Source: Obrimoposthia wandeli (lineage: Eukaryota). Taken from it: a stretch of DNA of 64,000 bases. Position 1 is the first letter of the stretch, and each line of letters begins with the position of its first letter. Under the pieces are notes generated by a model. It had not been told where the DNA came from, did not search any database, and saw nothing but the letters and a program-made list of their open reading frames with translations. The stretch spans positions 868,001-932,000 of the forward strand of contig CDROCS010000506.1 in assembly GCA_977020255.1 (NCBI GenBank). Direction: 5' to 3'. A program made the translations under genes and the position numbers. Of this stretch, positions 57,359 through 62,910 are shown one piece after another.

Positions 57359-57656
57359 ATTACAGCCTGTGCTAAACCTTACTTAAACTTAAAAGAGTTA
57401 ACCACTTTAACTATTAACGAGTTCATCGCTAATCGTCAAGGTGTGTCAAAAACTAACATCCGCCAATTAATTGACATGGGTATAGTACACATTCCTAAAT
57501 CAAGATGAAACAGTCACAAGAATTAATTATAAGGTGGGATAAAGATAGTCAGTGCTATATCACAATATCGACAGACTGAGCCGCAGATTATAACAAGCCA
57601 GTATTATAAGTAAGCGCATGAAACTTAACTGACCTCATGCGCTATCTAATTAGCCC

Positions 57657-58586
57657 TTAGCCTTCACCAAACTCCTCTTTCAGCTCAACGACTTGGTAAT
57701 GGCTGCCATTAAGCCCCCAAAATTCAGGTAATGTCGTTGCCACCGCTATCGATGACCAAGTACCGACAATCAAGCCAATAAACATCGCCGTAGAGAAACC
57801 ATCCAAAGGACCGCCTCCCAATAACCACAAAGCTGAAACCGTCATGAGTGTTGTACCAGATGTCACCATAGTACGTGATATCGTCGCCGCAATAGCTTCG
57901 TTGTTCGCATCCGCTATCGCTAATGTCGGTTTTAAAATAAGTAATTCACGGATACGATCACCAATGATAATCGAGTCATTTAATGAATAACCGATAATCG
58001 CCAGTATCGCCGCAAATACCGTCAAGTTAAACTCAAGTTGCAATGCCGCAAATACGCCAAGCACAAACAGCACATCATGCACCAAAGCAAATAGCGCACC
58101 CGACGCTAGACGCCATTCAAAACGATAACTTAAATACGCCATGATACATAACATCGACACGAGTAGTGCTAAGCCACCTTGATCCGCTAATTCAGCGCCA
58201 ACTTGAGAACCGACGATGCTGGTATTTAATACCTCAATATTCGATCCTAATGGTGCCAGTACGTCTCTCATATCGGCAATGCTCACACCAACGGCAGGCT
58301 CTGCATAACGTAATATCCAACGTCCTACTTCCCCGCCTTCAATCACACTGACATTTTGATCTAATGCCGATTGTAATAGTGGTGATATCTCACTCATGGT
58401 GATACTCGGATCAAGTTGTACTTCAGTGATCACACCGCCAGTAAAATCAAGTCCCCAGTTCAAGCCATTAATACTAATGAAGGCAATCGAAATTAGCATA
58501 AAAACAATTGAGATAGCGCTACTGAAATAACGTAATTTACTATATTTATTACTGTTTTTAATATTTGTCATGTTGATAGTCATCAT
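57657..58586 (-). CDS. secF: Protein translocase subunit SecF (second paralog, SecF2-like)
   Basis: GLDFTGG, IGYSLNDSIIIGDRIRE, ISRTMVTSGTT. Confidence 0.93.
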   Translation of the reverse strand: MMTINMTNIKNSNKYSKLRYFSSAISIVFMLISIAFISINGLNWGLDFTGGVITEVQLDPSITMSEISPLLQSALDQNVSVIEGGEVGRWILRYAEPAVGVSIADMRDVLAPLGSNIEVLNTSIVGSQVGAELADQGGLALLVSMLCIMAYLSYRFEWRLASGALFALVHDVLFVLGVFAALQLEFNLTVFAAILAIIGYSLNDSIIIGDRIRELLILKPTLAIADANNEAIAATISRTMVTSGTTLMTVSALWLLGGGPLDGFSTAMFIGLIVGTWSSIAVATTLPEFWGLNGSHYQVVELKEEFGEG

Positions 58587-58588
58587 AC

Positions 58589-60427
58589 TTATACCTTCAA
58601 GTCATGACGAGTATCACGACCCCATATTTTATTAATTAAAGCGCGTGATACGATGATCCCAGTAAACATACTGGTCAAAATACCTAAACCAAGTGTTAAC
58701 GCAAAACCTTGCACAGGTCCTTGGCCAATTGAATACAACACCACGGCAATAATTAACGTCGTAATGTTAGCGTCAACGATGGTACCAAAAGCACTGTCAA
58801 AACCACTGTTAATCGCTTGTGCAAAGCTACGACCTTCGCGTAACTTGTCTCGAATACGCTCAAACACCAGTACATTGGTATCCACAGCCATACCGACAGT
58901 CAGTACTAACCCGGCAATACCTGGTAACGTTAATACCGCACCAGGGATCAACGCTAATAAACCAAATAGCATGATGACATTAGCCAGCAAAGCAACGTTA
59001 GCCACCCAGCCTAATCGGCGATACCACAACGCCATAAATACCAACGTCATTCCTAAGCCAAGTGCCAATGCTGAAAAACCGTTCTGAATATTCTCGGCAC
59101 CCAGTGAAGGACCAATTGTTCTTTCTTCAACAATAGTGACAGGCGCAGTCAACGAGCCCGCGCGAAGTAATAGCGCTAATTCTTGCGCATCAGCCATGTT
59201 ACCCGCCCCAGTGATCCTGAACTGGCTACCAAGTTGTGCTTGGATAGTCGCAACACTAATCACGTTATTGGTTTTTTTAGTTGAACCATCGATATTACGG
59301 CTGTATTCACTGTAGAGCGTCGCCATTGGCTTACCAATATTGTGCTTGGTAAAGTCAGACATTTTCTTGCCGCCGGAATTATCTAAGGTGATATTGACTT
59401 GGGCTGCGCCCATTTCCCCGACACTAGCTCGCGCATCAATAATATGCTCGCCACCCAATATGGCGTCACGGGCAATACGTATTGGTGCACCATCATTATT
59501 GCTGACGACCATGCTGCCGCTGCTGATTGATTTAAGCTCATGAAACGCAAGACTGGCTGTCGCGCCAATCACATTTTTAGCGGTAGCCGGATCTTGTACT
59601 CCCGGTAATTCAATACGAATACGATGCTCACCTTGGCGCTGTACCATCGCCTCGGTAATACCTAACTCAGCAATACGACTGCGCATGGTTTGTAAGTTCT
59701 GCTGCACAGTAAGATTGACGATATCGGTTTTTTCAGCTTGCGGCATACTCACTTCAACGAACAATCCCGAGCTTTGCGTTACTTTCCATTGTGGATAGGT
59801 CGTTTCAATCTGTTTTAACAAGGCAACTTTAGCTTCATCTGTTGGTAAGTTCAGTTGCAGGCTATTTTCATCGTTGATATTGATCCTAACGCCACGCAGA
59901 CCCTGTTCACGAAAATCAAGGCGCAAATTATCCAATAACTGCTGTGCTCTGATATTGAATACCGGTTCCATATCAACATCTAGCAAGAACTGCACACCAC
60001 CACGAAGATCTAAGCCTAGCTTGATCGGCTTCAGCCCCATGTTTTGCAACCAAGATGGCGCAGCTGATACCAAGGCTAAAGTAATATCATCATCCGCAGG
60101 TAAAATGCTTTCAAGTATCGCCTTAGCACGGGTTTGAGTGCTAGCTTCTGCCAGTACAATAGTGGTTTTATCACCTTCTTGATCGATACGCGTCACCGCA
60201 ATATCGTTATTTTCAAGGGTTTGCTTTAGCGTATGGATAGCTGTTTTTTGTGCTTGTTGGTGATTAATTTGCAGCGCTGGATATTCGCCATATAAAGTCG
60301 GAATAGCACTGAGTAACATCACTAAAAGTGTGCAGATTAAGACAACATATTTCCAACCTGCATAATGGTTAAGTAACTTACGTTGTACTTTGGTATTTGA
60401 TTTTTTTGTCATGTGATAACTGTCCAT
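58589..60427 (-). CDS. secD: Protein translocase subunit SecD (second paralog, SecD2-like; no yajC upstream)
   Basis: LGLDLRGGVQFLL, RIRIELPG, EERTIGPSLG, GMAVDTNVLVFERI; start at ATG 60427 or TTG 60430 after GGAGAGAAGG. Confidence 0.94.
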   Translation of the reverse strand: MDSYHMTKKSNTKVQRKLLNHYAGWKYVVLICTLLVMLLSAIPTLYGEYPALQINHQQAQKTAIHTLKQTLENNDIAVTRIDQEGDKTTIVLAEASTQTRAKAILESILPADDDITLALVSAAPSWLQNMGLKPIKLGLDLRGGVQFLLDVDMEPVFNIRAQQLLDNLRLDFREQGLRGVRININDENSLQLNLPTDEAKVALLKQIETTYPQWKVTQSSGLFVEVSMPQAEKTDIVNLTVQQNLQTMRSRIAELGITEAMVQRQGEHRIRIELPGVQDPATAKNVIGATASLAFHELKSISSGSMVVSNNDGAPIRIARDAILGGEHIIDARASVGEMGAAQVNITLDNSGGKKMSDFTKHNIGKPMATLYSEYSRNIDGSTKKTNNVISVATIQAQLGSQFRITGAGNMADAQELALLLRAGSLTAPVTIVEERTIGPSLGAENIQNGFSALALGLGMTLVFMALWYRRLGWVANVALLANVIMLFGLLALIPGAVLTLPGIAGLVLTVGMAVDTNVLVFERIRDKLREGRSFAQAINSGFDSAFGTIVDANITTLIIAVVLYSIGQGPVQGFALTLGLGILTSMFTGIIVSRALINKIWGRDTRHDLKV

Positions 60428-60470
60428 CAATGCCTTCTCTCCATATCAAAATAGATATAGAGCTTTGATG
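60425..60470 (-). promoter_or_regulatory. mRNA hairpin sequestering the secD SD and start codon
   Basis: CAUCAA-AG-CUCUAUAUC-UAUUUU-GAUAUGGAG-AGAAGGCA-UUGAUG: 9-bp stem covering GGAG plus a 6-bp stem covering the AUG. Confidence 0.7.
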
Positions 60471-60642
60471 TATAACGATTTACATAAGATGGTTATATAA
60501 GGCGTTTATATACAATACAGGCATATTGGTGATTAACTTGCGTATAGATCCTGACAATAACGTAATATAACGCGTGTGTAGCAAGGATAAATAGGCAGAT
60601 AAAGGTAACAAAAATCAGTATGTTTAATACTTACATTTCTGT

Positions 60643-61155
60643 TTAAACAGATGTCATCACAGTGGGGTATTGGCGGTGAGAATATAATAAATTACAGTCT
60701 TTCCAACCTGATATACGTGATTTAGAAGAGGAAGTATGGGTTAACCAGTATTGCTCAAAATTAAAGTTTATCGCATAGCCGATCACAAAAGACGGTGATG
60801 GCGGAATCGATAATTCAATCTCGACTTGATAGTCTGGTTCAGGGTTATTTAGCAGTAAACGTCCGGCACTGCTGTAACGGGTCGTTTCCGTTAAAGCAAA
60901 TTCATAATTATGACGTGTTTTAGATGAAATTGGCGGTTGTTCTGACTCACCGCGATCTTGGCTAACGTTATTATCTTCATTCGCAGACACAAGCAGAGAT
61001 GCTGGTGAAAATGATGACTGCTCTATTATCGATTGTGTTGCCGATTGTGTTACTGATAGTGCTTTCGATACTTCGACCTGCGTACTAGCCTGAGCATTAA
61101 AGCCCACAACCATAATAAAAAGCAGAGTAAAGCATCGTACAAACCGAGCTAACAT
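60643..61155 (-). CDS. vemP: Secreted VemP-like translation-arrest (secretion monitor) peptide
   Basis: Signal peptide ending AQA; 170 aa; C-terminal RISGWKDCNLLY aligns with the Vibrio VemP arrest motif RIxGWKETNAMY; directly upstream of secD2F2. Confidence 0.8.
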   Translation of the reverse strand: MLARFVRCFTLLFIMVVGFNAQASTQVEVSKALSVTQSATQSIIEQSSFSPASLLVSANEDNNVSQDRGESEQPPISSKTRHNYEFALTETTRYSSAGRLLLNNPEPDYQVEIELSIPPSPSFVIGYAINFNFEQYWLTHTSSSKSRISGWKDCNLLYSHRQYPTVMTSV

Positions 61156-61242
61156 AGAACATAATCAATCATAAAAGATAATGGCATATCATATATCACT
61201 ATTGTTTAAACAGACAAGGATTATTTTAAACGTCAGAAAGCA

Positions 61243-61273
61243 AAAAAGGCTTACCGTTAGGTAAGCCTTTTTC
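61243..61273 (-). terminator. Terminator after the solo tRNA-Leu
   Basis: AAAAGGCTTACC-GTTA-GGTAAGCCTTTT. Confidence 0.85.
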
Positions 61274-61279
61274 TAAATT

Positions 61280-61365
61280 TGGTGCCCGAGGCCGGAATTG
61301 AACCGGCACGCCTATTAAGCGAGGGATTTTAAATCCCTTGTGTCTACCGATTTCACCACTCGGGC
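61280..61365 (-). tRNA. tRNA-Leu(UAA), solo copy
   Basis: GCCCGAGTGGTGAAATCGGTAGAC...TTTAAAA loop, long variable arm, encoded CCA. Confidence 0.95.
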
Positions 61366-61409
61366 TGAGTGATAAACTGTTAAGCTGCTGCCTAACCGGA
61401 TATGCGCTT

Positions 61410-61437
61410 ACTTTACCTGATTATGATATTGAGTCAA
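61410..61437 (-). promoter_or_regulatory. Stable-RNA-type promoter of the solo tRNA-Leu
   Basis: TTGACT-N16-TAAAGT followed by GCGC discriminator. Confidence 0.7.
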
Positions 61438-61867
61438 TATAAAATATTAAACATAAATCAAATGGTTGAAAATAAGCTCTATTTGTTCACTTATCATCTA
61501 GCCATCATTAGAAACAATCCTAATATCATAACCATCAAGGGAATTGGCTGAACGGTTTTAAACATCGCACTTATAATTACGTTACTCTATTACTGGTAGC
61601 TCATTGCGCAGGAATGCTCTTCAAAAAGTAACCATCGACAAACTCAAATTGACTATCAATTAACCCCATCGCAGATTTGAAATTAACATTTGTGACAATA
61701 TCACTTTCAACAGAATTGTAGAGTGGATAGCCTCATTCTATGTATAGCCTTGTTCATCCGCAGAATTAACAAAAGAATCCCTTTGGTAAGTATCCCACGT
61801 TGCTGAATGTATGAGGTAACCATTGAGTATGAGAGATTATATGGTTAACGTTCACTAAATTACAGGC

Positions 61868-61900
61868 ATAAAAAAACCAGCTATAAGCTGGTTTTTTTAT
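61868..61900 (-). terminator. Terminator of the tRNA array
   Basis: ATAAAAAAACCAGCT-ATA-AGCTGGTTTTTTTAT. Confidence 0.9.
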
Positions 61901-61907
61901 AAAATAT

Positions 61908-61993
61908 TGGTGCCCGAGGCCGGAATTGAACCGGCACGCCTATTAAGCGAGGGATTTTAAATCCCTTGTGTCTACCGATTTCACCACTCGGGC
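61908..61993 (-). tRNA. tRNA-Leu(UAA)
   Basis: Identical to the other Leu copies. Confidence 0.95.
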
Positions 61994-62063
61994 ACTGAAT
62001 TCTTTGTAAAGTTTATTCGTTCCAGTGCAGAACCAACAAACTTGCTCTTTCAAGCTTTAATCA

Positions 62064-62137
62064 TGGAGGCGGGTCCCGAAGTCGAATCGAGGTCCACGGA
62101 TTTGCAATCCGCTGCATAGCCACTCTGCCAACCCGCC
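62064..62137 (-). tRNA. tRNA-Cys(GCA)
   Basis: GGCGGGTTGGCAGAGTGGCTATGCAGCGGATTGCAAATCCG...; U73 discriminator; encoded CCA. Confidence 0.95.
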
Positions 62138-62224
62138 ATATACTGCGATGACAAATTAATTGTTAACACAGAGCGCTAATTTTACATCTTAGCCAGATAT
62201 ACTATTGCTAGTATTAGTAATAAT

Positions 62225-62310
62225 TGGTGCCCGAGGCCGGAATTGAACCGGCACGCCTATTAAGCGAGGGATTTTAAATCCCTTGTGTCTACCGATTTCA
62301 CCACTCGGGC
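62225..62310 (-). tRNA. tRNA-Leu(UAA)
   Basis: Identical copy. Confidence 0.95.
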
Positions 62311-62380
62311 ACTGAATTCTTTGTAAAGTTTACTCGTTCCAGTGCAGAACCAACAAACTTGCTCTTTCAAGCTTTAATCA

Positions 62381-62454
62381 TGGAGGCGGGTCCCGAAGTC
62401 GAATCGAGGTCCACGGATTTGCAATCCGCTGCATAGCCACTCTGCCAACCCGCC
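62381..62454 (-). tRNA. tRNA-Cys(GCA)
   Basis: Identical copy. Confidence 0.95.
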
Positions 62455-62542
62455 ATATCCTGCCATCACAACTTTCGTTGCTAATACAGGTTGCTAATTT
62501 TACATCTTAGCGAGATATACTATTGCTAGTATTAGTAATAAT

Positions 62543-62628
62543 TGGTGCCCGAGGCCGGAATTGAACCGGCACGCCTATTAAGCGAGGGATTTTAAATCCC
62601 TTGTGTCTACCGATTTCACCACTCGGGC
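62543..62628 (-). tRNA. tRNA-Leu(UAA)
   Basis: Identical copy. Confidence 0.95.
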
Positions 62629-62698
62629 ACTGAATTCTTTGTAAAGTTTATCCGTTCCAGTGCAGAACCAACAAACTTGCTCTTTCAAGCTTTAATCA

Positions 62699-62772
62699 TG
62701 GAGGCGGGTCCCGAAGTCGAATCGAGGTCCACGGATTTGCAATCCGCTGCATAGCCACTCTGCCAACCCGCC
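62699..62772 (-). tRNA. tRNA-Cys(GCA)
   Basis: Identical copy. Confidence 0.95.
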
Positions 62773-62824
62773 AAATTTTATTTCTACATCTATATATTTA
62801 ACGTTATATCTAACAAAAAGAAAT

Positions 62825-62910
62825 TGGTGCCCGAGGCCGGAATTGAACCGGCACGCCTATTAAGCGAGGGATTTTAAATCCCTTGTGTCTACCGATTTCA
62901 CCACTCGGGC
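62825..62910 (-). tRNA. tRNA-Leu(UAA), first in the array
   Basis: Identical copy. Confidence 0.95.

What the first reader, a model, noticed from the sequence alone, without database searches (positions are those of the whole stretch)
60643..61155. Hypothetical 170-aa ORF is a VemP-like secretion-monitoring arrest peptide controlling a second SecDF
Seen: a cleavable signal peptide (MLARFVRCFTLLFIMVVGFNAQA) and a C-terminal segment SRISGWKDCNLLYSHRQYPTVMTSV (60717-60643), directly upstream of a secD-secF pair that lacks yajC. Known: Vibrio alginolyticus VemP is a secreted peptide whose arrest motif (HRIxGWKETNAMYVALNxQF) stalls the ribosome when export is poor and induces SecDF2; SecDF1 is Na+-driven and SecDF2 H+-driven. 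Here R, I, G, W, K, N and Y are conserved but the last residues (SHRQYP vs VALNSQF) are entirely different. Inference: a divergent arrest peptide with a different PTC-proximal sequence, gating an alternative-ion SecDF in a non-Vibrio-looking genome.
Basis: partly seen in the sequence, partly recalled or inferred. Interest (0 to 1): 0.85.

Follow-up and report, generated by a model that had tools for sequence, protein, structure and literature searches.

The report
VemP-family secretion monitor before Moritella secDF
The small gene is a Moritella member of the known VemP family of secreted peptides, which stall their own ribosome to switch on the neighbouring protein-export genes secD and secF; close Moritella relatives are already listed as VemP in a published table, so this is a sound but largely known call.

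Summary
A 170-aa ORF (60643-61155, minus strand) has a typical Sec signal peptide. Near its C-terminus it carries RISGWKDCNLLY, an exact match to the published VemP family consensus RxxxWKxxNxxY. It lies 215-230 nt upstream of secD-secF, with no yajC in the window.

Homology goes beyond the motif. The only significant PDB match is the VemP nascent chain (E 0.0023 for the single sequence, 2.7e-5 for a profile). The genome is a Moritella.

Fujiwara et al. 2024 (Nat Commun 15:2711, Suppl. Data 3) already list several Moritella orthologues, with the same SHRQYP tail, as VemP. Family membership is therefore published, but it is neither discussed nor tested there.

The six residues nearest the peptidyl-transferase centre do differ from V. 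alginolyticus. In 32 Moritella-type sequences, Pro sits exactly at the position aligned to the VemP P-site (W+13) in 30. It is encoded by three synonymous codons and is always followed by six more residues.

The leader has three conserved helices, and the last masks the secD ribosome-binding site. How a stall about 140 nt upstream opens that helix is unresolved.

Ion specificity and a second SecDF could not be tested.

Side find: Serratia has VemP-like genes upstream of yqjA-mzrA instead of secDF.

The parts
60643..61155 (-). vemP-like ORF, 170 aa (stop codon 60645-60643)
   Evidence: It has 30 orthologues in Moritella and marine metagenomes, all annotated 'hypothetical'. The best PDB hit is the VemP nascent chain.
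61087..61155 (-). Sec signal peptide, residues 1-23. n-region with R4 and R7, hydrophobic core C8-F19, and A-Q-A before the predicted cleavage site.
   Evidence: Read from the sequence and conserved in the orthologues. Fujiwara's table records signal peptides for family members by SignalP/DeepTMHMM. No signal-peptide predictor was run here.
60877..60879 (-). Arg93 codon, aligned to VemP Arg-85 (the residue that delays arrest release in V. alginolyticus)
   Evidence: HMM alignments pair t-r-y with q-r-w. The role of Arg-85 comes from PMC7793623. The Arg is present in 12 of 14 aligned orthologues.
60664..60717 (-). Putative arrest motif, R147-P164: RISGWKDCNLLY (family-wide part) plus SHRQYP (Moritella-type PTC-proximal part). 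The Pro164 codon is 60666-60664 and equals W151+13.
   Evidence: R, S, G, W, K, D, N, L, Y, R and P are invariant or nearly so in 32 sequences. Pro is encoded by CCC, CCA and CCT. The P-site rule W+13 comes from Fujiwara's script.
60646..60663 (-). Six-codon tail after Pro164. Semi-conserved, and of constant length in all 32 orthologues.
60607..60643 (-). Leader helix H1. An A:U-rich hairpin that starts at the last base of the stop codon.
   Evidence: RNAalifold consensus and pair counts. 98.9% of cells are paired, with one-sided changes only.
60539..60597 (-). Leader helix H2 (60597-60591 pairs with 60545-60539). It encloses a region of variable length.
   Evidence: Three of seven pairs show changes on both sides. 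There is one C-C mismatch in this window.
60424..60529 (-). Leader helix H3. AUGCCU (60524-60519) pairs with AGGCAU (60435-60430), and CC (60529-60528) pairs with GG (60425-60424). It covers the SD-like AGG and GG just upstream of the secD start.
   Evidence: Two pairs show compensatory changes (GC/AU; AU/UA/UG). 93% of cells are paired.
58589..60427 (-). secD, of the vemP-linked (NF009545) type. The start is probably ATG 60427 or ATG 60412; the TTG at 60430 is only the longest-ORF start.
   Evidence: Scores 988 bits, against 646 for E. coli SecD (cut-off 728) and 927 for the V. penaeicida vemP-linked SecD. Identity is 56% to V. penaeicida and 41% to E. coli.
57657..58586 (-). secF
61188..61217 (-). 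Promoter-like site (TTGTCT, 18 nt, TATGAT) between the tRNA-Leu terminator hairpin and the ORF
   Evidence: This is a consensus match only; the number of such sites in the region does not exceed the shuffled expectation.
61241..61365 (-). tRNA-Leu(UAA) (61280-61365) followed by a GC-stem hairpin and T-run (61267-61242). Together they separate the ORF from upstream transcription.
   Evidence: The hairpin was read directly; the terminator scan did not list it.

Best explanation
The ORF is the Moritella orthologue of VemP, a Sec-monitoring 'arrest peptide'.

Proposed mechanism:
1. The peptide is made with a signal peptide and exported through SecYEG.
2. While the last part is being synthesised, the segment R147-P164 sits in the ribosomal exit tunnel and stops elongation. 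The stop is most likely with Pro164 in the P site (the position aligned to VemP Gln156), or with Pro164 in the A site.
3. Pulling by the working export machinery (SecDF with PpiD in Vibrio) releases the stall.
4. When export is weak, the stall persists and raises expression of the downstream secD-secF.

Shown here: family membership, selection at the peptide level on the motif up to Pro164, a conserved RNA helix that masks the secD ribosome-binding site, and RNA contigs that join the ORF, the leader and the secD 5' end.

Inferred, not shown: the arrest itself, its site, its release by export, and the way the stall opens the masking helix.
For: - Exact match to the published family consensus RxxxWKxxNxxY.
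- The VemP nascent chain is the only significant PDB hit.
- The alignment extends to the Arg-85 equivalent.
- Across 12 Moritella-type loci the order is the same wherever the contig reaches: ORF, secD, secF, fleQ-like regulator.
- Published classification of Moritella orthologues as VemP.
- Pro at W+13 in 30 of 32 sequences, kept through three synonymous codons.
- SecD is of the same NCBIfam type as Vibrio vemP-linked SecD, and differs from the yajC-linked E. coli SecD.
- The conserved leader structure has 93.9% of cells paired, against 48% or less for slid controls, with compensatory changes in the SD-masking helix.
- In marine metatranscriptomes one contig spans 60152-61061 (ORF, leader, secD 5' end). 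Depth on the ORF and leader is 5-10 times that on the secDF body in two libraries.
Against: - All six PTC-proximal residues differ from V. alginolyticus VemP, where L153, N154 and Q156 are critical or important. Arrest competence therefore cannot be taken over by homology alone.
- No experimental work on any Moritella VemP was found.
- The SD-masking helix lies about 140-240 nt downstream of the presumed stall site.
- A direct pairing of the ORF 3' end with the secD start region is predicted in this window only. Start-region accessibility rises from 0.16 to 0.50 when the stalled ribosome is modelled. The pairing is not conserved in relatives and is no stronger than shuffled controls.
- Contig depth is a poor measure of expression.
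Confidence: 0.8

Rival explanations
1. It is a VemP homologue and does arrest, but it controls secDF through transcription attenuation, Rho access or mRNA stability in the long conserved leader. This would resemble tnaC-tnaA logic, rather than direct melting of an SD-masking stem by the stalled ribosome.
For: - The stall site and the SD-masking helix are far apart.
- A strongly conserved block begins exactly at the stop codon.
- The spacing from Pro164 to the stop is fixed at six codons in all 32 sequences.
- RNA contig depth drops 5-10 fold between the leader and the secD body.
- Equilibrium folding shows no conserved coupling between the stall and the start region.
Against: - The established V. 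alginolyticus model is translational: an SD held in a stem-loop.
- Intergenic distances of 155-316 nt are normal in the family, including Vibrio, so distance alone is no argument.
- H1 is A:U-rich and not a typical intrinsic terminator, and the scan finds no terminator in the leader.
- The folding test also fails on most Vibrio loci, so it has little power.
Confidence: 0.2
2. It is a degenerate VemP relative that is still secreted but no longer stalls the ribosome, because the PTC-proximal half of the motif has been replaced. On this view secDF is regulated otherwise.
For: Seventeen of the 19 residues of the V. alginolyticus stalling window matter for arrest. Moritella differs at about 11 of them, including all six nearest the PTC.
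Against: - The divergent tail is itself under strong purifying selection in Moritella: S/A, H/Q, R, x, Y, P, with Pro kept through synonymous codon changes. A decayed motif would not show this.
- A similar S-Q-R-L-Y-P tail recurs in an unrelated secDF-linked family member (P0043).
- Linkage to secDF is kept in every Moritella-type locus where the contig reaches downstream of the ORF.
Confidence: 0.08
3. The system is a homeostatic feedback on the cell's main or only SecDF, like SecM-SecA, and not a switch between a Na+-driven and an H+-driven paralogue.
For: No second secDF or yajC is present in the window, and nothing in the sequence reveals ion specificity. Moritella are obligate marine psychrophiles, for which low-Na+ episodes are less obvious (own knowledge).
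Against: - The SecD belongs to the same NCBIfam type as the Vibrio vemP-linked SecD2.
- E. coli housekeeping SecD falls below that model's cut-off.
- yajC-secDF is near-universal in Gammaproteobacteria (own knowledge), so a housekeeping copy elsewhere in the genome is likely.
Confidence: 0.2

Closest known systems
Vibrio alginolyticus VemP (PDB 5NWY chain s; Ishii et al. 2015; Su et al. 2017, PMC5449182)
   Same: - Signal peptide, and a spacer of about 120-130 residues.
- An Arg-85 equivalent (Arg93).
- RISGWK-x-x-N-x-x-Y in the same register.
- A short tail after the aligned P-site.
- Position upstream of a yajC-less secD-secF.
- HMM-level homology.
   Different: - The residues aligned to V151-Q156 are S-H-R-Q-Y-P, so critical L153, N154 and Q156 are replaced and the aligned P-site residue is Pro.
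- The lower-tunnel Trp is at W-14, not W-19.
- Six codons, not three, lie between the aligned P-site and the stop.
- The leader is 215-230 nt long, and its SD-masking helix is formed with an internal leader segment.
Moritella entries of the VemP set in Fujiwara et al. 2024 (for example Moritella sp. PE36 WP_157517758.1 and M. dasanensis; Suppl. Data 3)
   Same: - Orthologues, 66-78% identical (tblastn best segment).
- The same SHRQYP tail and the same gene order.
- Already labelled 'VemP' with the P-site at W+13.
   Different: - This window is a different Moritella genome. Its nearest named relative is Moritella sp. F3, at 86% identity.
- It has Cys at W+3, and Thr rather than Ala after the Pro.
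- The published entry is a table row only, with no experiment or discussion.
E. coli SecM, and the RAPP-like ('RQH') arrest peptides such as uDF_RQH_Enterobacterales of Alteromonas (PMC10987492)
   Same: Secreted monitoring substrates upstream of a Sec gene. A proline at the stall site is essential to the arrest, and an SD-masking stem-loop is present in the leader.
   Different: No R-A/G-P-P or G-I-R-A-G-P motif here, and only a single Pro preceded by Tyr. There is no sequence homology. The tunnel part of the motif is VemP-like.
hCMV uORF2 arrest peptide
   Same: Su et al. superpose its C-terminal helix on the upper helix of VemP. Its last residue, bound to the P-site tRNA, is Pro, as the Moritella alignment predicts.
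   Different: It is eukaryotic, it stalls at termination, and it is unrelated in sequence and function.

Membership tests
VemP family (as defined by Fujiwara et al. 2024) | Consensus RxxxWKxxNxxY near the C-terminus | tested here: met
   R147-I-S-G-W151-K-D-C-N155-L-L-Y158. The criterion is quoted.
VemP family (as defined by Fujiwara et al. 2024) | N-terminal localisation signal (Sec signal peptide) | tested here: met
   Residues 1-23 have a positively charged n-region, a 12-residue hydrophobic core and an A-x-A site. The signal is conserved in orthologues. This was judged by inspection; no predictor was run.
VemP family (as defined by Fujiwara et al. 2024) | Small ORF directly upstream of secD/secF on the same strand | tested here: met
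   The same arrangement is seen in 11 related loci.
VemP family (as defined by Fujiwara et al. 2024) | Sequence homology to V. alginolyticus VemP (same cluster) | tested here: met
   PDB VemP chain E 0.0023 and 2.7e-5. Moritella orthologues are in the published cluster.
V. alginolyticus-type VemP arrest motif (H138-Q156) | PTC-proximal residues V-A-L-N-x-Q, with critical L153, N154 and Q156 | tested here: not met
   The aligned residues are S-H-R-Q-Y-P. The motif residues come from PMC5449182. This feature defines the V. alginolyticus motif, not the family as published; tails vary widely across the family.
VemP family (function) | Elongation arrest at the aligned P-site, released by export | not testable with these tools
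   This needs a toeprint, a peptidyl-tRNA assay or a reporter. Indirect support: conservation is highest up to Pro164, then falls to semi-conserved.
VemP family (function) | Leader stem-loop that hides the secD ribosome-binding site and is opened by the stalled ribosome | tested here: inconclusive
   A conserved SD-masking helix H3 is present and shows covariation. Coupling to the stall site is predicted only in this window, not in relatives. The same test is weak in Vibrio.
VemP-SecDF2 switch | A second, yajC-linked SecDF1 in the same genome, with different ion use | not testable with these tools
   Only the 64-kb window is available, and it holds no second copy. SecD is of the vemP-linked NF009545 type. 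No sequence marker of ion choice is known to me.
SecM | FxxxxWIxxxxGIRAGP motif, upstream of secA | tested here: not met
   The motif is absent and the downstream gene is secD. The motif is quoted.
RAPP-like (RQH/ApdA/ApdP) arrest peptides | C-terminal R/Q/H-A/G-P-P or R-A-P-G | tested here: not met
   The tail is S-H-R-Q-Y-P-T-V-M-T-S-V, with no di-proline and no R-A/G-P.

The most novel reading that the evidence does not exclude
The Moritella-type VemP may be a natural hybrid. It keeps the VemP tunnel element (RxxxWKxxNxxY) but replaces the PTC-silencing helix end by a Tyr-Pro stall. That would make it mechanistically closer to the proline-dependent arrests of SecM, RAPP-like peptides or hCMV uORF2.

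It may also pass the signal to secDF through a relay in a conserved three-helix leader, or through transcription attenuation, instead of direct melting of an SD stem. That would explain the strictly fixed six-codon spacing between the Pro and the stop codon and hairpin.
Probability: 0.3. Interest if true: 0.55.

Novelty: new member of a known kind. Interest (0 to 1): 0.3.

Why it matters
For annotation, a 'hypothetical protein' in Moritella genomes can be named a VemP-family Sec-monitoring leader peptide. Its secDF can be named the vemP-linked (SecDF2-type) copy.

For the arrest-peptide field, the case shows that only the tunnel half of the VemP motif is family-wide. The six PTC-proximal residues are lineage-specific but strongly selected within a lineage. 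This sits uneasily with the alanine scan in V. alginolyticus and can be tested directly.

The unresolved link between the stall site and a distant SD-masking helix is a second concrete question.

The Serratia relatives upstream of yqjA-mzrA suggest that VemP-type monitors were re-used for genes other than secDF. Searches restricted to sec/yidC neighbourhoods would have missed this.

Tried and rejected
1. Pfam and NCBIfam have no model for the ORF, so family assignment rests on HMM searches and the literature.

2. Direct melting model. The minimum-energy fold of this window pairs codons 164-168 with the secD start region (z = -2.9 for the whole fold). However, the duplex is no better than shuffled sequence (-15.1 against -14.2 +/- 3.3 kcal/mol). 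It is absent in the closest relative L018 and has no conserved register. I rejected it as a conserved mechanism.

3. Accessibility modelling with the ribosome fixed at Pro164 or at the stop gave no consistent gain across 12 Moritella-type loci. Across 7 Vibrionaceae loci the gain was seen only in some, so the test has low power.

4. An Rfam scan of the leader found nothing except the tRNA.

5. The promoter/terminator scan found no terminator in the leader.

6. Looking for a second secDF or yajC:
- There is none in the window.
- The scan's earlier notes hold nothing under those words.

7. The primary papers Ishii 2015 (PNAS) and Mori 2018 (JBC) are not held. Details of the V. alginolyticus stem-loop therefore come second-hand from PMC5449182.

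8. SecM and RAPP-like families were considered and rejected on their motifs.

Full report
**What is there.** On the minus strand, 60643-61155 is a 170-aa ORF with an ATG start. Residues 1-23 form a textbook Sec signal peptide: Arg4 and Arg7, a hydrophobic core from C8 to F19, and A-Q-A before the predicted cleavage site. The C-terminus reads S146-R-I-S-G-W151-K-D-C-N155-L-L-Y158-S-H-R-Q-Y-P164-T-V-M-T-S-V170.

Downstream on the same strand lie secD and secF. secD has PF13721, PF21760, PF22599 and PF02355, and scores 988 bits on NF009545. secF scores 258 bits on TIGR00966. A sigma-54 FleQ-type regulator follows.

Upstream lies a tRNA-Leu(UAA), the last of an array of eight tRNA-Leu and tRNA-Cys genes. 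After it come a GC-stem hairpin with a T-run (read) and a weak promoter-like site. There is no yajC and no second secDF in the window.

**Organism and orthologues.** All close homologues are 'hypothetical proteins' of Moritella species or of marine metagenomes, at 43-96% identity. The window is therefore from a Moritella.

In 12 Moritella-type loci the gene order is conserved wherever the contig reaches: ORF, secD, secF, fleQ-like gene.

**Is it VemP-like beyond a short motif?** Yes.
- phmmer of the single ORF against all PDB chains returns the VemP nascent chain of the stalled-ribosome structure 5NWY as top hit. E is 0.0023 and the alignment covers residues 53-159.
- A profile of 14 orthologues gives E 2.7e-5 and nothing else.
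- The alignment puts Arg93 on VemP Arg-85, the conserved residue that delays arrest release in V. alginolyticus.
- The same profile, run exhaustively against 1.84 billion representative proteins, finds 71 clusters. Nearly all are 120-230-aa proteins that end in R-[IL]-[SGA]-[GA]-W-K-[ED]-x-N-x-x-[YF] plus 5-12 variable residues.
- A genome scan with the profile recovers Photobacterium, Vibrio and Enterovibrio loci where the ORF precedes secD.

**Already published.** Fujiwara et al. 2024 (PMC10987492) define the VemP family in three steps. They take the MMseqs cluster around V. alginolyticus WP_017819886.1, remove sequences lacking the 'consensus RxxxWKxxNxxY-like motif', and remove those lacking a localisation signal. 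This leaves 339 sequences.

Their script places the P-site 13 residues after the Trp. Their Supplementary Data 3 lists Moritella sp. PE36 WP_157517758.1, whose tail is ...SRISGWKDSNLLYSHRQYPAVITSV, as 'VemP / uDF_VemP_Enterobacterales' with the P-site at that Pro.

The stored part of the table has at least four Moritella rows, and 'SHRQYP' occurs three times in it. No paper in the library discusses or tests a Moritella VemP. The family call for this ORF is therefore sound but not new. What is left is the divergent half of the motif and the regulatory wiring.

**The divergent half.** The aligned residues are:

| V. alginolyticus VemP | Moritella ORF |
|---|---|
| R139 | R147 |
| W143 | W151 |
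| K144 | K152 |
| N147 | N155 |
| Y150 | Y158 |
| V151-A-L-N-S-Q156 | S159-H-R-Q-Y-P164 |

In V. alginolyticus, 17 of the 19 residues H138-Q156 matter for arrest. N154 stacks on U2506, and the L153A and Q156stop mutations reduce stalling.

Within Moritella the replacement tail is itself strongly conserved. Across 32 sequences:
- S/A at W+8, H/Q at W+9, and R at W+10 (31 of 32).
- W+11 is variable (Q, L, V or E).
- Y at W+12 (31 of 32) and P at W+13 (30 of 32).
- After that, conservation falls (A, T, D or R at W+14).

Pro164 is encoded by CCC, CCA or CCT in different loci, and the Leu, Ser, His and Arg codons also vary synonymously. Selection therefore acts on the peptide. All 32 sequences have exactly six residues after the Pro.

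The same kind of tail occurs outside Moritella. P0043 has S-Q-R-L-Y-P-H-S and is also upstream of secD-secF. P0049, P0087 and P0095 also have Pro at W+13.

A Pro at the stall site is reminiscent of SecM and of RAPP-like peptides. It also recalls the hCMV uORF2 peptide, whose C-terminal helix Su et al. superpose on VemP's and which ends with a P-site Pro. Whether Pro164 is in the P site or the A site cannot be decided here.

**The secDF.**
- NF009545 (cut-off 728 bits) scores the window SecD at 988.
- It scores the vemP-linked SecD of V. penaeicida at 927.
- It scores the yajC-linked E. coli SecD at 646, which is below the cut-off.
- Identity is 56% to the V. penaeicida protein and 41% to E. 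coli SecD.

So this is the vemP-linked (SecDF2-type) lineage. Whether the genome also has a yajC-secDF1, and which ion either copy uses, could not be tested.

**The leader RNA.** The stop codon is 215-230 nt from the secD start. ATG 60427 is preceded by an AAGG at good spacing. ATG 60412 is the start used by RefSeq for PE36. A 1-nt deletion in one MAG separates the two frames.

An alignment of 12 loci shows three strongly conserved blocks. RNAalifold puts them into three side-by-side helices:
- H1 (60643-60607) starts at the last base of the stop codon.
- H2 (60597-60591 with 60545-60539) encloses a segment of variable length.
- H3 pairs AUGCCU (60524-60519) with AGGCAU (60435-60430), and CC with GG (60425-60424). 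It covers the SD-like purines just upstream of the start.

Of all cells, 93.9% are standard pairs, against 37-48% when partners are slid. Five pairs show changes on both sides, two of them in H3. The structure was derived from this same alignment, so the slid control is lenient. H3 is thus a good candidate for the SD-masking stem expected from the VemP and SecM models.

**Coupling of the stall to H3 is not explained.** A ribosome with Pro164 in the P site covers mRNA to about 60650. H1 begins at 60643, and the 5' arm of H3 lies about 140 nt further on.
- In this window the minimum-energy fold pairs codons 164-168 with the secD start region. Modelling the stalled ribosome raises start-region accessibility from 0.16 to 0.50.
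- That pairing is absent in relatives, including the closest one, and is no stronger than shuffled sequence.
- The same modelling is also inconclusive for most Vibrionaceae loci.
- The exception is V. penaeicida. There an 8-nt anti-SD (CCUCAAUA) follows the stop codon directly and pairs with UAUUGAGG at the secD start. That is the textbook design.

Long spacers of 79-316 nt are, however, normal for the family. Relay through H1 and H2, kinetic folding, or attenuation and mRNA-stability effects all remain open.

**Transcript evidence.** In two marine metatranscriptomes carrying a near-identical Moritella, one contig runs from 61061 in the ORF through the leader to 60152 in secD.
- Word depth is 39 and 21 on the ORF and leader, against 3-5 on the secDF body.
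- The neighbouring tRNA is at 500-1000, which argues against DNA carry-over.

This fits co-transcription with a step down after the leader. Contig depth is a crude measure, however, and a contig does not prove a single transcript.

**Verdict.** It overstates novelty, because Moritella orthologues are already in the published VemP set. It also goes beyond the evidence on ion specificity and on the existence of a second SecDF. The divergent, proline-ended PTC-proximal segment and the distant SD-masking helix are real, and both can be tested by experiment.

**Side observation.** The profile scan also hit Serratia sp. Ag1. A conserved clade of about 145-aa 'hypothetical proteins' occurs in Serratia and Chania.
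- They have a signal peptide, and a tail R-[IL]-G-G-W-K-[ED]-S-N-[IM]-L-Y-R-G-[ST]-L-T-Y-H-S that is conserved to the last residue.
- They lie not before secD but between exuR and yqjA (a DedA/VTT-domain gene), which is followed by mzrA. The MzrA product is a SecD-TM1 domain protein.
- No paper in the library links VemP or arrest peptides with yqjA.
- A further relative in a 5-Mb genome (L023) has no sec gene nearby at all.

Noticed in passing
L009:3656-5299 (Serratia sp. Ag1); L026 and L027:3001-4630 (Serratia quinivorans-type): A conserved Serratia/Chania clade of VemP-like ORFs. Each has a signal peptide and a C-terminus R-[IL]-G-G-W-K-[ED]-S-N-[IM]-L-Y-R-G-[ST]-L-T-Y-H-S. The ORFs lie between exuR and yqjA (DedA/VTT domain), which is followed by mzrA (SecD-TM1 domain), and not upstream of secDF. 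This may be a VemP-type monitor re-wired to yqjA-mzrA. No literature link was found.
   Followed up: partly
L023:3501-3935 (CP028897.1, a 5.0-Mb genome): An 'orphan' VemP-like ORF (P0080, tail ...WKESNALYKSQITYHI) with no secD/secF within 3.5 kb. Only two tiny ORFs and LysR/MFS genes lie downstream.
   Followed up: no
window 60408-60643: The vemP-secD leader contains three blocks that are nearly invariant across Moritella: a block immediately after the stop codon...AAGTTAATCACCAATATGCC...; and GGCATTGATGGACAG-N-ATCAAATGA. None matches an Rfam family. The first block starts exactly at the stop codon, and the distance from Pro164 to the stop is fixed at six codons in 32 sequences.
   Followed up: partly
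window 61280-62910: A tandem array of eight tRNA genes on the minus strand alternates tRNA-Leu(UAA) and tRNA-Cys(GCA), with a period of about 320 bp. It lies between pgsA and the vemP-like gene.
   Followed up: no
window 60152-61061 versus 57600-60150: In two marine metatranscriptomes, contig depth over the vemP-like ORF and leader is 5-10 times that over the secD/secF body. In one library the high-depth contig ends at 60481, just upstream of the secD start.
   Followed up: partly
L010:4445-4600 (Vibrio penaeicida): The eight bases right after the vemP stop codon (CCUCAAUA) are a perfect complement of UAUUGAGG at the secD ribosome-binding site 140 nt downstream. This is a clean example of the direct-melting design that the Moritella leader lacks.
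   Followed up: no
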